From IMG/VR virus record IMGVR_UViG_3300022868_000009, positions 186,001-250,000 of that record: a stretch of 64,000 nucleotides of DNA; one strand, given 5' to 3'. Positions 2,973 to 56,808 of the stretch are shown here, piece after piece. The position numbers and the translations under genes were made by a program. Position 1 is the first letter of the stretch. Each line of letters opens with the position of its first letter. Under the pieces are notes generated by a model that was not told the DNA's origin, did no database searches, and was given only the letters and a program-made list of their open reading frames with translations.

Positions 2973-3167
2973 TAATGAAATTATTTTTTCTTTTGAATTT
3001 AAATTATTATTTTAGAAAAGTTTATGGTTAAATTCTTAAGATGCATCAAAAGCTATTTCCACATGAAACGAAGATTTGGTGCAAAATTATGATAGTATTC
3101 TAATTAATTAATTTTTTTCTTTAAGAAAATTTTCTTATTTTAGAAGAACATTAAAACGAAAAAAATT

Positions 3168-10743: not shown

Positions 10744-11366
10744 TGACAGACTTTGAAAAAATATATAAATTAGAAACTGGAGAATATCCTAGTCGCATAG
10801 ATATGCATTCTGAAAGATCTATATTTACTAGTGAATATGTTGAATGGTTAGAAGAACGACTTGATTCTAGTAAACAAAAACCAATGGTTAGAACAATCAA
10901 AAGAATGTTTAACCATTCTTTTAAAAAAGAATGGTATGAAACATACTGGGGTTTTGATTTGCATGGTACTATTTTAATTCCAAATCATATTAAAGGTCAT
11001 TTAGATACAGAATTTTATCCTTATGCAAAAGAATGTATGCAAATATTATCTAAAAGAAAAGATGTTAAAATGTTTACATGGTCTTCATCACATCTATATG
11101 AATTAGAATCATATATAAATTTCATGAAAGAAAATAACATTGAATTTGATTATATACAAGAAAATCCTGAAATATCATCAAGTAAAGGTTTTTTCGGTTA
11201 TTATGAACAAAAACCTTATTTTAATGTTATGTTTGAAGATAAATCTGGATTCTTTCCAGAAGAATGGAAAGACATATATAAATTACTAAAATACTATGAA
11301 AATAATAATATTTATCCAAATCCCGAATGGGATATGAAAACTGAACCAGGTGGTTCTCTAGAATAA
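10743..11366 (+). CDS. HAD-superfamily phosphatase-like protein
   Basis: FDLHGTI (motif I variant), WSSS, KPYF...FEDK. Confidence 0.65.
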   Translation: MTDFEKIYKLETGEYPSRIDMHSERSIFTSEYVEWLEERLDSSKQKPMVRTIKRMFNHSFKKEWYETYWGFDLHGTILIPNHIKGHLDTEFYPYAKECMQILSKRKDVKMFTWSSSHLYELESYINFMKENNIEFDYIQENPEISSSKGFFGYYEQKPYFNVMFEDKSGFFPEEWKDIYKLLKYYENNNIYPNPEWDMKTEPGGSLE

Positions 11367-12251: not shown

Positions 12252-12548
12252 ATGGATTTTAAAAACGCATTTATTGACGACTTACTTTATAGTATGAATG
12301 AATATTTACCTAAATTAAAAACAATTGCATGGTATCCAGAACCTTTCACAATTATTCTAATTTTAGGAGAAAATGTTTATGATTTTGATTATGAAAATAA
12401 AATGAAATTATACGAAATAACTGAAGAACTTTGTGATGAATATGAATATAATTTCGAAAAAATAAAAGAAAAATTAAATGTTATTGAATCAATTATATCA
12501 GAAGGTAAACACACACTTAATTATAATCATATAGACGAAAATGAGTAA
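12252..12548 (+). CDS. Hypothetical protein
   Basis: ORF after promoter. Confidence 0.6.
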   Translation: MDFKNAFIDDLLYSMNEYLPKLKTIAWYPEPFTIILILGENVYDFDYENKMKLYEITEELCDEYEYNFEKIKEKLNVIESIISEGKHTLNYNHIDENE

Positions 12549-47957: not shown

Positions 47958-48914
47958 ATGAAAGAATTAGAAAACGTTGATCTTTTCAACATGACAGCTG
48001 ACGACGAATCGTTAAATGTCTTCGACAAACCGACTACAAATCAAGACGGAATTTACAGACCAAAATTAGATGAGGCAAAAGATAAGAAAACTGGATATCG
48101 TTCAGTTATTAGATTTTTACCTAACCTCTTCGAAAATGGTAAAATAGGACCTAGTGCAATAGAAAAACATGTACATTACGCTGACCTAAAAAACGAACCG
48201 GGATTAGCTAATTATTACGACTGTGCAAAAAACTGGGATCCTAAATGTCCACTCTGTACAATATATTGGAAACTTAAAAATTCCAAAAATCAAGCAGATG
48301 TTGAGAAATCTCAACTCATCAATAGAACAACTAAGTATTATTCTTATGTTCAAATTATTGAAGATGACCAAAACACCGATTTAATAGGAAAAATTTTAGT
48401 ATTCCCTTATGGATATACTATTAAAGAAAAAATTAACAGTGAACGTAATGGTGATGTTACTGGGGAACCCTGTAATGTGTTTGACTTAGCAACAGGCAAA
48501 GATTTTGTTCTTATTATCAAAGAAAAAGGTGGATTTCCAAATTATGAAGGATCACAATTTAAAGATAGTTCACCTATCAAATTGTATGATGCTAATAAAG
48601 CTAAATTCCTATCAGCTCCTGTAGATGAGAATGGTAGAATAACAAATGCTAAAGTGCAAAAGAAAGTCAAAGATTTCTTACTTGAAAGAACTGTAACACT
48701 TGATGAACATGCACCAGTACAATGGAATGAAGAAGTAAAAGGTAAAATTGAAAACATTTTAGCTATACTTAATGGTGAAGAAATAGTTAAAGCAGAAAGA
48801 TCTTCTAATAAGGCAACAACTGATTCAACAAATGATAACAAAGATCTACCAACTGACTTTGGTGGTGATGAAACAGACGCTGAAGATTTCTTTAGTATAG
48901 AAGATGAAGATTAA
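47958..48914 (+). CDS. Single-stranded DNA-binding protein (T4 gp32-like)
   Basis: IRFLP, CPLC, YY..V.II.D....GKI, FD...GKDF, acidic tail. Confidence 0.88.
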   Translation: MKELENVDLFNMTADDESLNVFDKPTTNQDGIYRPKLDEAKDKKTGYRSVIRFLPNLFENGKIGPSAIEKHVHYADLKNEPGLANYYDCAKNWDPKCPLCTIYWKLKNSKNQADVEKSQLINRTTKYYSYVQIIEDDQNTDLIGKILVFPYGYTIKEKINSERNGDVTGEPCNVFDLATGKDFVLIIKEKGGFPNYEGSQFKDSSPIKLYDANKAKFLSAPVDENGRITNAKVQKKVKDFLLERTVTLDEHAPVQWNEEVKGKIENILAILNGEEIVKAERSSNKATTDSTNDNKDLPTDFGGDETDAEDFFSIEDED

Positions 48915-51111: not shown

Positions 51112-51169
51112 AAATAATTGTTTTTTCTTGAAATTTTTAGTATATTAATGTAAATTAAAACTAAAAATT

Positions 51170-51934
51170 ATGAGAATAGGATACCATACTTCAATCTCCG
51201 AAGGACTTAAAAAAACTGCAAAATATATTAAAGATACAGGAATGAGCGCAACACAAATTTTCGCAGGCTCACCTAGAACATATTATGTATCAAAAAACCA
51301 ATCAGAAAGACACTACATAAAAGAACTAAATTGTTATAAAGTAGTTCATATAAATTACCTAGTAAATCCAGCAAAATCAAGACCAGCCATACCTAAATCT
51401 ATTATTGATAATATTAGATTTTGTAGAGACATTGATGCTGATGGTATTGTAATTCATTGGGGTTCAAATGAAAATCTTAAAGAAGCATTGCACTATTCAT
51501 ATGAAAACTTTTTAGCAGTAAGAAATAAAATAGGATTAGAAACAAAAATATTAATAGAAACAACAGCCGAAGGTGGAAACAAATTAAAATTTAATACACT
51601 AATAGACTTTTATGACAAATATAAAGATGAATTAAACTTAGGATTATGTTTTGACACCGCTCACCTTTATGCAGCAGGTTATAACGTATTTAAATTAATT
51701 GAAAAACATGGAAAAAATATAGATGTAATGCATTTAAATAACCCAAGTCCAGATGTAGTTTTCGGAAAACATCTAGATAGACATAATATGTCTCTTTTTG
51801 ATGAAGCAGGAAAATTTACAAGAGAAGAAATATATGAATTAATGAGACTTGGCACAAAATATGATATACCAATGATTTTAGAAACAGGAGAACCACATAA
51901 TGATTTCATGATTTGTGAATCAATAAAACTATAG
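51170..51934 (+). CDS. nfo: AP endonuclease IV-like (TIM barrel)
   Basis: IGYHTS, QIF..SPR, H..YLVN, IETTA, CFDTAH, HLN, DRH, ILET. Confidence 0.88.
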   Translation: MRIGYHTSISEGLKKTAKYIKDTGMSATQIFAGSPRTYYVSKNQSERHYIKELNCYKVVHINYLVNPAKSRPAIPKSIIDNIRFCRDIDADGIVIHWGSNENLKEALHYSYENFLAVRNKIGLETKILIETTAEGGNKLKFNTLIDFYDKYKDELNLGLCFDTAHLYAAGYNVFKLIEKHGKNIDVMHLNNPSPDVVFGKHLDRHNMSLFDEAGKFTREEIYELMRLGTKYDIPMILETGEPHNDFMICESIKL

Positions 51935-52009
51935 ATCTTTTTAACTCATTTGAATTAAAAAAATTCACATTTAATTTTTAATTTTTGAAAAAATTCACTA
52001 TATTTATAG

Positions 52010-52100
52010 TAGATAAAAAAGAAAAAAAGGTTAACAAAAGTTCATAGTTTAGTAGTTTAGTGGTGAAAGGGCGGACAGATAGTTCGCCTTTTCTATTTTA
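52010..52100 (+). ncRNA. Candidate small RNA (own promoter and terminator, no ORF)
   Basis: TATATTTA at 51999-52006; TTCATAGTTTAGTAGTTTAG core; 12-bp hairpin 52065-52093 plus U-rich tail. Confidence 0.5.
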
Positions 52101-52145
52101 CTGTTTTTCGTAATTAAACTAATCATTTATTTTTTAGTAAATATT

Positions 52146-52571
52146 ATGTTTGAAAAATTTAACGAGAAAATGAAAATTGATTTTATAGAAGTAATTAATA
52201 GATTATTTAAAAACAAAATAGATTATAAATTACTGATAGATAAAGATAAAGAAGATAATTTCTTTATGGTTAATAGAAAAATTGCAACCAAATATATTAA
52301 AGGTGCACAATTTTTTAATTCTAGATATGTTGATAAAGCAACTGCTTTAGATATTTGGAAATATTTTTTTAGAAATGCTCAAGGGATACCTTCTTGGTAT
52401 TGGGCTCCAAAAAATAGAACAAAAACACCCAAAACAAAAACTCCTAAAAAAGATATTGAAAAAATAACATCATTTTATGATTTAAATAATGATGATTTTT
52501 TATTTTTAGAAAAATATTTCAAGGATAACGTTGATTACGAGATTAAAAAACTAAAAAGATTTGAAGAATGA
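52146..52571 (+). CDS. Possible clamp-loader small subunit (gp62-like)
   Basis: FFMVNR...AQFFN pattern resembles T4 gp62. Confidence 0.4.
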   Translation: MFEKFNEKMKIDFIEVINRLFKNKIDYKLLIDKDKEDNFFMVNRKIATKYIKGAQFFNSRYVDKATALDIWKYFFRNAQGIPSWYWAPKNRTKTPKTKTPKKDIEKITSFYDLNNDDFLFLEKYFKDNVDYEIKKLKRFEE

Positions 52572-54877: not shown

Positions 54878-54906
54878 AAAACCATCGTTTAAATTACGAT
54901 GGTTTT
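54878..54906 (-). terminator. Intrinsic terminator after phoH
   Basis: AAAACCATCGT...ACGATGGTTTT. Confidence 0.8.
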
Positions 54907-56780: not shown

Positions 56781-56808
56781 AAAAATCCCACTGAGAGTGG
56801 GATTTTTT
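56781..56808 (-). terminator. Intrinsic terminator after S1 gene
   Basis: AAAAATCCCACT-GAG-AGTGGGATTTTT. Confidence 0.85.

What the first reader, a model, noticed from the sequence alone, without database searches (positions are those of the whole stretch)
51995..52100. Candidate phage small RNA antisense to translation start sites
Seen: in a 211-bp ORF-free gap, a host-type promoter (TATATTTA, 51999) is followed by an A-rich stretch, then TTCATAGTTTAGTAGTTTAG (52041-52060, tandem TAGTTTAG), then a GC-rich 12-bp terminator hairpin. The core is the reverse complement of CTAAACTACTAAACTATGAA, an A-rich leader plus AUG. It pairs 10/10 with the start of ORF 22253 (AAACTATGAA) and 8/8 with the starts at 12252 and 13455. 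Known: Bacteroidota mostly initiate on A-rich leaders without SD, and Bacteroides has start-site-pairing paralogous sRNAs (FopS). Inference: an early sRNA that silences host or phage mRNAs at their start codons, or mimics a host sRNA.
Basis: partly seen in the sequence, partly recalled or inferred. Interest (0 to 1): 0.72.

Follow-up and report, generated by a model that had tools for sequence, protein, structure and literature searches.

The report
Candidate small RNA in huge phage
A huge salt-lake phage that probably infects Bacteroidota carries a conserved promoter-to-terminator cassette predicted to make a non-coding RNA of about 88 nt, but the idea that this RNA silences genes by pairing with their start codons is not better than chance.

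Summary
A Bacteroidota-type promoter (51971-52012, -7 box 51999-52006) scores 31 bits against a 67-member promoter family of this genome. It is followed by about 50 nt of unstructured A-rich and UAG-rich sequence, then a 12-bp intrinsic terminator (52065-52093).

The cassette is kept in the same order in two other phage lineages (downstream protein 79-81% and 61% identical). Promoter and terminator are conserved above neutral level.

After the terminator lies a second, different promoter-like element (TTAAAC-N18-TAAATA, 52114-52143). It is conserved in all three lineages and sits in front of a T4 gp62-like clamp-loader gene. The promoter-to-terminator cassette therefore looks like a stand-alone RNA gene lying in the nfo 3' UTR, not simply a leader.

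The proposed function is not supported:
- The 10/10 and 8/8 start-site matches exist but are at chance level in this 25% GC genome.
- The anti-AUG triplet is lost in one lineage.
- The tandem TAGTTTAG is a lineage-specific 8-nt duplication.
- No Rfam family, host-genome copy or second copy was found.
- No RNA-seq run was listed, so expression is untested.

Verdict: a plausible new phage sRNA candidate with unknown target. A cis-acting termination checkpoint remains the main rival.

The parts
51170..51934 (+). nfo-like AP endonuclease gene. It has its own weaker promoter of the same class at 51113-51154, and its mRNA would end at the same terminator as the candidate RNA.
   Evidence: Pfam PF01261, E 1e-13. 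Promoter matrix hit of 19.7 bits at 51113. Homologues are named deoxyribonuclease IV by their sources.
51971..52012 (+). Class-1 promoter of Bacteroidota sigma-A type: T-run at about -33, a GAA element, and the -7 box TATATTTA at 51999-52006.
   Evidence: 31.2 bits against the genome matrix of 67 sites, with 0 in the control. Parts of it recur at three other loci of the genome. It is 93% and 81% identical in L008 and L009. The TAnnTTTG consensus is from PMC7366714.
52012..52100 (+). Predicted non-coding transcript of about 85-90 nt. The start within +/- 3 nt and the 3' end in the U tract are both inferred.
   Evidence: Position of the -7 box and of the terminator. It folds as an unstructured 5' half plus one hairpin in all three lineages. 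No start codon lies between the promoter and the UAG-rich segment. There is no tRNA or Rfam match.
52024..52034 (+). AAAAAGGTTAA, the best-conserved block of the RNA body; AGGTTAA is invariant in all three lineages.
   Evidence: Alignments A2 and A4.
52041..52064 (+). The tandem TAGTTTAG x2 lies at 52045-52060.
   Evidence: L008 has one copy and L009 a different arrangement, giving 4, 2 and 6 UAG triplets. Identity is 0.77 and 0.56, which is about neutral.
52065..52093 (+). Intrinsic terminator hairpin (12 bp, loop of 5), followed by a U-rich tail to about 52100.
   Evidence: All 36 pair cells across the three lineages are paired; 3 changes are one-sided and none is compensatory.
52114..52143 (+). 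Class-2 promoter-like element, TTAAAC-N18-TAAATA, in front of the downstream gene.
   Evidence: The pattern has 41 genome hits, 15 of them 10-110 nt upstream of co-oriented starts (7% expected). It ranks first of 60 hexamer permutations. The same 18-nt spacing is seen in L008 (GTAAAC..TAAAAA) and L009 (TTAAAC..TATAAA).
52170..52571 (+). T4 gp62-like clamp-loader A subunit gene. The true start is at 52170, not 52146.
   Evidence: The MKIDF N-terminus is conserved in the homologues. The ESM Atlas nearest cluster carries PF16790, score 0.94. The AF2 model has pLDDT 91.7. The top structural match is T4 gp62, 3u5z_A, at Z 6.4 over 121 residues, with the next match at 4.8.

Best explanation
This is a stand-alone small-RNA gene nested in the 3' UTR of the nfo gene.

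**Proposed mechanism**
1. Host RNA polymerase with the Bacteroidota primary sigma factor recognises the class-1 promoter and starts at about 52012.
2. About 55 nt later the polymerase meets a strong intrinsic terminator and releases an RNA of about 88 nt.
3. The 5' 50 nt of that RNA are single-stranded: an A tract, AGGUUAA, then UAG/UUUAG repeats. The 3' end is a stable hairpin.
4. The downstream clamp-loader gene is served by its own, different promoter placed after the terminator.
5. The single-stranded 5' arm is the likely working surface, either for pairing with A/U-rich RNA or for binding a single-strand RNA-binding protein. This is the same build as the Bacteroides GibS/FopS sRNAs.

**What is shown and what is inferred**
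- Shown: the motifs, their order, their conservation and the predicted fold.
- Inferred: that transcription occurs, that the RNA is stable, and that it acts in trans.
For: - The promoter belongs to a 67-site family. About 37 of the sites lie within 60 nt of a co-oriented ORF start, against about 4% expected.
- Promoter and terminator are conserved in three lineages above the level of the flanks and of third codon positions.
- The order promoter-then-terminator is rare. Seven promoters in this genome show the usual terminator-then-promoter overlap. Only four show promoter-then-terminator before the next ORF of 50 aa or more. The other three are a tRNA-Met unit and two units of about 200 nt with no convincing ORF.
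- No class-1 promoter lies between terminator and gene, but a class-2 promoter-like element does, conserved with fixed spacing in all three lineages.
- Distant relatives carry the clamp-loader gene, or nfo, without the cassette, so it is not an obligatory leader of either gene.
- In B. thetaiotaomicron, a transcription start plus an intrinsic terminator is the criterion for high-confidence intergenic sRNAs, and 76% of intergenic sRNA candidates use the canonical promoter (PMC7366714).
Against: - There are no expression data: no RNA run was listed, and the DNA contigs were uninformative for the RNA body.
- The 5' arm is about as diverged as neutral sites (0.56-0.77). It also varies in length and repeat number, whereas seeds of trans-acting sRNAs are usually their best-conserved part.
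- No target stands out.
- Only three independent sequences exist, and the hairpin shows no compensatory change.
- The class-2 promoter is a statistical inference. If it is not real, the class-1 promoter must feed the clamp-loader gene by read-through.
- No other copy exists in this genome, in a complete 640-kb relative, or in the public collections searched.
Confidence: 0.45

Rival explanations
1. It is a cis-acting termination checkpoint. The class-1 promoter is the early promoter of the gp62-like gene, and the terminator in its leader lets through only a fraction of transcripts, or only those modified by a phage antiterminator. The short RNA is a by-product, as with lambda pR'-tR' 6S RNA. 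The UAG repeats just before the hairpin could be a protein-binding site, as in the TRAP or HutP systems.
For: - The gene lies on the same strand, 44-69 nt after the terminator, in all three lineages.
- No second class-1 promoter is present.
- In distant nfo relatives a -7 box directly after nfo drives the next gene.
- The downstream gene is a replication gene expected to be expressed early.
- From general knowledge, a clamp loader needs fewer A subunits than its other subunits.
Against: - A conserved class-2 promoter-like element sits after the terminator.
- The leader has almost no C, so no antiterminator helix can form against the 5' arm of the hairpin.
- UAG number and spacing are irregular (2, 4 and 6), unlike TRAP or HutP sites.
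- This genome otherwise places promoters after terminators when it needs both.
- No antiterminator protein was identified.
Confidence: 0.25
2. One reading: an early sRNA whose UUCAUAGUUUAG... core pairs with A-rich leaders plus AUG and blocks translation of phage or host mRNAs.
For:
- Matches of 10 nt or more are found at 5 starts, against 1.0 +/- 1.3 expected, reached by 6 of 300 shuffles.
- One 12-nt match lies at -13..-2 of a gene at genome position 341207.
- FopS sRNAs work this way in Bacteroides (PMC11697453).
Against: - There is no excess at 6-9 nt.
- Pairing to start regions is no stronger than to coding windows.
- The decamer is an ordinary start context. The C at -2 that it needs is present at only 5% of starts.
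- The CAU is lost in L009/L010 and the repeat number varies.
- Host targets could not be tested.
Confidence: 0.1
3. There is no function of its own. The hairpin is simply the nfo terminator. The promoter is either a relic of a lost small gene, whose A-rich leader and 3' end remain, or a leaky extra promoter, and the short RNA is noise.
For: - The RNA body evolves at about the neutral rate, by slippage.
- The A-rich stretch plus AAGG resembles a translation start region. L009/L010 still have an AUG right after it.
- The element is confined to a narrow clade.
Against: - A 31-bit promoter is kept at 81-93% identity across lineages whose proteins are 61-81% identical.
- The promoter-before-terminator order is kept in all three lineages.
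- AGGTTAA is invariant.
Confidence: 0.15
4. It is a leader mini-ORF that senses UAG read-through. Ribosomes reading through in-frame UAG codons, using the phage's tRNA-CUA, would run into the terminator and melt it.
For: - In L009/L010 an AUG follows AAGGUUAA. The 25-codon frame has three in-frame UAG codons and runs through the hairpin to a UAA.
- The genome encodes two tRNAs with a CUA anticodon.
Against: - The window and L008 have no start codon there.
- A 2-nt loop indel shifts the frame between lineages.
- Three of six UAGs in one frame, and an open frame of that length, are unremarkable.
- There is no sign of TAG recoding in this 344 kb.
Confidence: 0.03

Closest known systems
GibS / FopS intergenic sRNAs of Bacteroides thetaiotaomicron (PMC7366714, PMC11697453)
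   Same: [quoted passage not shown] One FopS member is also derived from a 3' UTR.
   Different: There is no sequence or Rfam match. The 5' arm here is poorly conserved and made of low-complexity repeats, whereas FopS keeps a conserved R1' seed. It is a single copy rather than a paralogous family. It is encoded by a phage from a salt lake. No target or protein partner is known.
3' UTR sRNAs with their own promoter that share the mRNA's terminator (for example MicL and DapZ in enterobacteria; from general knowledge)
   Same: The promoter lies after or near the end of the upstream gene, and the sRNA is co-terminal with that gene's mRNA.
   Different: Those sRNAs depend on Hfq and have defined conserved seeds and targets. 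None of that is known here.
Lambda pR'-tR' 6S RNA with Q antitermination (from general knowledge)
   Same: A strong promoter is followed closely by a terminator, with phage genes beyond it, and a short terminated RNA is produced.
   Different: No Q-like protein or pause element was identified. A separate promoter-like element lies after the terminator here. The downstream unit is two small genes rather than a late operon.
Phage-encoded trans-acting sRNAs (lambda LPR1/PreS, bioRxiv 10.1101/2024.10.31.621285; lambda OOP and prophage DicF from general knowledge)
   Same: Each is a short phage transcript with its own promoter and terminator that acts, or is proposed to act, on mRNAs by pairing.
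   Different: Those have experimental support and known targets and come from enterobacterial phages. Here expression and targets are untested.
TRAP and HutP attenuation sites of Bacillus, and type III toxin-antitoxin ToxI repeats (from general knowledge)
   Same: UAG-type triplets or short repeats lie between a promoter and a terminator, upstream of a gene.
   Different: TRAP and HutP sites have regularly spaced triplets and competing structures. ToxI repeats are about 34-36 nt and precede an endoribonuclease toxin. Here the repeat unit is 8 nt and irregular, and the gene is a clamp-loader subunit.

Membership tests
FopS/GibS sRNA family | Sequence and structure match to the family model, which the authors deposited in Rfam | tested here: not met
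   Rfam 15 scans of the whole window at gathering score, and of 51800-52300 at E up to 10, gave only L20_leader (19.3 bits) and SNORD123. I could not confirm that the FopS model is in this release.
FopS/GibS sRNA family | Conserved R1/R1' seed at the 5' end | not tested
The 5' arm here is not conserved even among the three phage lineages.
FopS/GibS sRNA family | Canonical sigma-ABfr promoter; single-stranded 5' stretch plus terminator hairpin | tested here: met
   The -7 box TATATTTA matches 7 of the 8 positions of TAnnTTTG (all 6 specified bases except the final G, which is A here), within a 31-bit family motif. The folds of all three lineages show this architecture.
FopS/GibS sRNA family | Pairs with translation initiation regions of targets; associates with RbpB | tested here: inconclusive
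   There is no excess complementarity to phage start regions. Host mRNAs and protein binding cannot be tested with these tools.
Intrinsic (Rho-independent) terminator | G+C-rich hairpin followed by a U tract, on the transcribed strand | tested here: met
   12 bp with 6 G-C pairs, loop of 5 and tail UAUUUUA. The predicted 89-nt RNA folds at -18 kcal/mol. The hairpin is kept in all lineages, with 100% of pair cells paired.
Bacteroidota sigma-A promoter | -7 TAnnTTTG with a T-rich -33 element about 19 nt upstream; a transcription start a few nt downstream | tested here: inconclusive
   The motif features are met, and family members sit just upstream of ORF starts. The transcription start itself cannot be tested without RNA data.
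Type III toxin-antitoxin (ToxI-like RNA with ToxN-like toxin) | Tandem repeats of about 34-36 nt, then a terminator, then an endoribonuclease toxin gene | tested here: not met
   The repeat unit is 8 nt, present twice, and absent in L008. The downstream protein has no Pfam or PADLOC hit and resembles T4 gp62.
TRAP/HutP-type protein-mediated attenuation | Regularly spaced (G/U)AG triplets overlapping competing terminator and antiterminator structures; a cognate RNA-binding protein | tested here: not met
   Triplet number (2, 4, 6) and spacing are irregular. No alternative structure is predicted. The cognate protein was not searched for.
Known RNA families (tRNA, tmRNA, riboswitches and others) | Match to ARAGORN or to an Rfam covariance model | tested here: not met

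The most novel reading that the evidence does not exclude
The cassette encodes a genuine trans-acting regulatory RNA of a huge phage that infects Bacteroidota. Its unstructured A-rich and UAG-repeat arm would act on host RNAs or titrate a host single-strand RNA-binding protein. Together with the other promoter-to-terminator units in this genome, it would show that such phages carry their own set of small RNAs. I know of no characterised sRNA from a phage of this phylum, and the literature searches here found none.
Probability: 0.25. Interest if true: 0.6.

Novelty: new member of a known kind. Interest (0 to 1): 0.35.

Why it matters
RNA-level control is almost unexplored in phages of Bacteroidota and in huge phages. 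If real, this would be a conserved, easily testable sRNA gene with host-type signals, and a starting point for that question.

The by-products of this analysis are useful for annotating this genome and its relatives whatever the RNA turns out to do:
- a 67-site host-type promoter family;
- a second promoter class;
- further promoter-to-terminator units without ORFs;
- a gp62-like clamp-loader assignment for the downstream gene.

The negative result also matters. In a 25% GC genome with stereotyped A-rich start contexts, 8-10 nt 'antisense to start codon' matches carry no information.

Tried and rejected
1. **tRNA or known RNA family.** ARAGORN and Rfam found nothing.
2. **Small ORF.** The window and L008 have no start codon before the UAG-rich part. 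The GTG-started frame through the hairpin is shifted by a 2-nt loop indel between lineages.
3. **More copies or relatives by DNA pattern.**
   - The viral contig scans returned only a 100%-identical sister contig, plus one unrelated terminator, L015.
   - The metagenome scan returned 49 stretches. All were ordinary terminators except this genome's own contig and that sister contig.
   - The scan of species genomes returned 0 hits.
4. **Covariance model R1.** It found only generic gene-end terminators in this genome and in three relatives' records.
5. **Transcript evidence.** No RNA run was listed. Logan DNA contigs from four salt-lake or marine runs gave one variant of the promoter and nothing across the RNA body.
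6. **AGGUUAA as the seed.** TTAACCTTTT occurs 4 times against about 4 expected, once in a leader (genome position 323252) and in the wrong order relative to the AUG-pairing part.
7. **Conserved pairing with neighbouring genes' start regions.** Nothing consistent was found across the three lineages.
8. **TAGTTTAG as a genome-wide operator.** It is not enriched.
9. **TAG recoding.** It is not evident in this 344 kb.
10. **Replication origin.** The element sits near convergent, not divergent, genes, and the GC-skew profile tracks gene strand.
11. **First structure model of the downstream protein.** With 6 sequences it was too poor to use, at pLDDT 57. Foldseek against PDB found nothing.
12. **nfo homologues.** They added no new lineage carrying the cassette.

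Full report
**Setting.** The window is bases 186001-250000 of a 344,634-bp viral contig. CheckV rates it about 48% complete, so it is a fragment of a genome of several hundred kb. GC content is about 25%. The contig carries 35 tRNA genes, two of them with a CUA anticodon. DNA runs that hold it are salt-lake and marine metagenomes. There is no match in the GenBank phage collection. A sister contig (IMGVR_UViG_3300023257_000007) is 100% identical across the region and adds no information.

**The observation.**
- The gap is 51935-52145.
- TATATTTA is at 51999, followed by an A-rich stretch.
- TTCATAGTTTAGTAGTTTAG is at 52041-52060.
- A 12-bp hairpin with a U-rich tail is at 52065-52093. It is the only terminator-like site in 2 kb, against 0.2 expected. 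The 93-nt stretch 52010-52102 folds at -19.4 kcal/mol.
- Homologues of the downstream protein all begin MKIDF, which corresponds to 52170. The gene therefore starts there, and the non-coding interval is 235 nt.

**The promoter is real by genomic criteria.** Part of the gap recurs at three other loci of the genome. Iterating a position matrix from these sites converged on 67 sites genome-wide, with none in a Markov-simulated control.
- The consensus is roughly ATTTTT..TTTTaGAA.A..TTcCgTATATTTgTAT. That is the Bacteroidota -7 box TAnnTTTG (PMC7366714), plus a T-run about 19 nt upstream and a GAA element.
- About 37 of the 67 sites lie within 60 nt upstream of a co-oriented ORF start, where about 4% would be expected.
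- The site at 51971-52012 scores 31.2 bits.
- nfo has its own weaker site at 51113.

**Conservation.** Homologues of the downstream protein led to contigs from two further lineages that keep the order nfo, gap, gene.
- These are L008 (protein 79-81% identical) and L009/L010 (61%).
- Identity to the window in L008 and L009 respectively is 0.93 and 0.81 for the promoter, and 0.82 and 0.76 for the terminator.
- The RNA's 5' part scores 0.77 and 0.56.
- The two flanking spacers score 0.45-0.70.
- Third codon positions of the neighbouring genes score 0.71 (L008) and 0.58-0.63 (L009).
- All 36 hairpin pair cells are paired. The three changes are one-sided (to G-U), and there is no compensatory change.
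- AGGTTAA is invariant.
- All three RNAs fold as an unstructured 5' half plus the hairpin.
- More distant relatives carry the clamp-loader-like gene directly behind other genes, or carry nfo followed directly by a -7 box and the next gene. They lack the cassette.
- Pattern scans and a covariance model found no other copy anywhere.

**Leader or separate gene?** The downstream protein is probably a T4 gp62-like clamp-loader A subunit.
- Its nearest ESM Atlas cluster carries PF16790.
- A 77-sequence alignment gave an AF2 model at pLDDT 91.7.
- The best structural match among 48,161 PDB representatives is T4 gp62 (3u5z_A) at Z 6.4 over 121 residues, with the next at 4.8.
- Foldseek against PDB found nothing, and single-sequence Pfam was silent. 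This is a moderate-confidence call.
- A gp32-like gene lies upstream at 47958-48914.

A replication gene 70 nt behind a terminator, with no second class-1 promoter, argues for a leader. Three observations argue the other way.
- First, this genome normally puts terminators before promoters: there are seven cases in which the terminator's U tract overlaps the promoter's T-run. Promoter-then-terminator before the next ORF of 50 aa or more occurs only four times. These are the finding, a tRNA-Met unit, and two units of about 200 nt next to tRNA clusters. Those two have no convincing ORF and no Rfam match, and one is strongly structured at z -4.6.
- Second, the only conserved blocks in the spacer after the terminator are TTAAAC and TAAATA, 18 nt apart (52114-52143). 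The same spacing is kept in L008 and L009. Genome-wide, TTAAAC-N17-19-TAWAWW has 41 hits, 15 of them 10-110 nt upstream of co-oriented starts (7% expected). It ranks first among all 60 permutations of the hexamer. That is a second promoter class, and it gives the clamp-loader gene its own promoter.
- Third, the leader contains almost no C, so it cannot form an antiterminator against the hairpin.

I therefore favour a stand-alone RNA gene (0.45) over a termination checkpoint (0.25).

**The proposed function.**
- Matches of 8 nt or more occur at 16 starts, against 13.8 +/- 11.3 for dinucleotide shuffles of the seed. Only the class of 10 nt or more is nominally high, at 5 against 1.0 +/- 1.3, reached by 6 of 300 shuffles.
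- Against the leaders of the other 66 class-1 promoters the counts equal the shuffles.
- Duplex energies to start regions (mean -7.97, top-ten mean -16.7 kcal/mol) fall in the range obtained with random coding windows (means -7.6 to -7.9, top-ten means -14.8 to -17.0).
- Start contexts are stereotyped.
- The CAU opposite AUG is missing in L009/L010.
- The tandem TAGTTTAG is an 8-nt duplication relative to L008, and the number of UAG triplets is 4, 2 and 6.
- TAGTTTAG is not enriched in the genome.
- There is no Rfam match, including to the families searched at E up to 10, and no copy in bacterial genomes. Mimicry of a host sRNA therefore has no support.

**Other readings considered.**
- A mini-ORF with three in-frame UAG codons that runs through the terminator exists only in L009/L010. 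It is not supported in the window.
- The type III toxin-antitoxin, TRAP/HutP and replication-origin readings fail on the features listed in the membership table.

**Comparison with known systems.** In build, this matches Bacteroides intergenic sRNAs such as GibS and FopS: a canonical promoter, a single-stranded 5' arm and a terminator (PMC7366714 and PMC11697453). It also matches 3' UTR sRNAs that have their own promoter. It is not a member of the FopS family by sequence. Phage-encoded sRNAs are established in lambda (bioRxiv 10.1101/2024.10.31.621285). None turned up for phages of Bacteroidota in the searches here.

**Verdict.** This is a credible but unproven new sRNA candidate with unknown target. 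Interest is modest until a transcript is shown.

Noticed in passing
Whole genome G000. In-window sites at 3108, 6980, 12188, 22189, 51113 and 51971; dense cluster at genome 302.8-325.6 kb (L069, L070): There is a 67-site family of Bacteroidota-type promoters (-7 TAnnTTTG plus a GAA element). About half lie in one 23-kb region, all on the + strand, interspersed with tRNA genes and short genes. Several of those genes have AGGAGG-like sequences before the ATG.
   Followed up: partly
Genome 310411, 315117, 320996, 322910 and 325366 (L069:8405-8478, L069:13111-13184, L070:2990-3060, L070:4904-4980, L070:7360-7436): Five class-1 promoters are followed not by an ORF but by a shared element of about 60 nt with an invariant core GAGTAGACT (most copies read GAAGAGTAGACTCCAA). 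There is no Rfam match and only weak consensus structure. This may be a paralogous family of short RNAs or leaders.
   Followed up: partly
Genome 166189-165953 (-) = L088:148-385, and genome 42843-42595 (-) = L087:290-540: These are two more promoter-to-terminator units of about 200-250 nt next to tRNA clusters. They have no ORF above 35 aa and no Rfam match. The first has a G+C-rich core and folds far better than shuffles (z -4.6), so it may be an unknown structured RNA.
   Followed up: partly
Genome 313203-313290 (L069, about 11203-11290): The sequence after promoter 313161 contains a canonical-looking tRNA T-arm (GTTCGATTCC) and an acceptor-like end. Neither ARAGORN nor Rfam calls it. It may be an aberrant or tRNA-like RNA.
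   Followed up: no
Genome 112614-112688 and 140629-140701: There are two tRNA genes with a CUA anticodon (amber suppressors). Even so, this 344-kb part shows no sign of TAG recoding: only 4 long frames contain internal TAG, and each of those has many. TAG ends 41 of 481 called ORFs.
   Followed up: partly
Window 52114-52143, 54892 (-), 8711 and others; 15 sites genome-wide: A second promoter-like class, TTAAAC-N17-19-TAWAWW, is enriched about five-fold just upstream of gene starts. It may serve a different sigma factor or a different stage of infection.
   Followed up: partly
Window 52146-52571: The ORF caller's start at 52146 is probably wrong, because all homologues start at the ATG at 52170. 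The protein family (457 representatives at E 0.001 or better) has no Pfam assignment but resembles the T4 gp62 clamp-loader subunit.
   Followed up: yes
L009:900-985 and the same stretch of L010: In this lineage only, an AUG follows AAGGUUAA. It opens a 25-codon frame with three in-frame UAG codons that spans the terminator.
   Followed up: partly
Window 54879-54905 and 56783-56805: Hairpins score as terminators on both strands at these two places, so they may be bidirectional terminators; 56783-56805 lies between the ends of two same-strand (-) ORFs.
   Followed up: no
Genome 309683, 313851, 315075, 316040, 317673, 319615 and 324508: In these compact terminator-promoter junctions the terminator's U tract doubles as the promoter's upstream T-run.
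   Followed up: no
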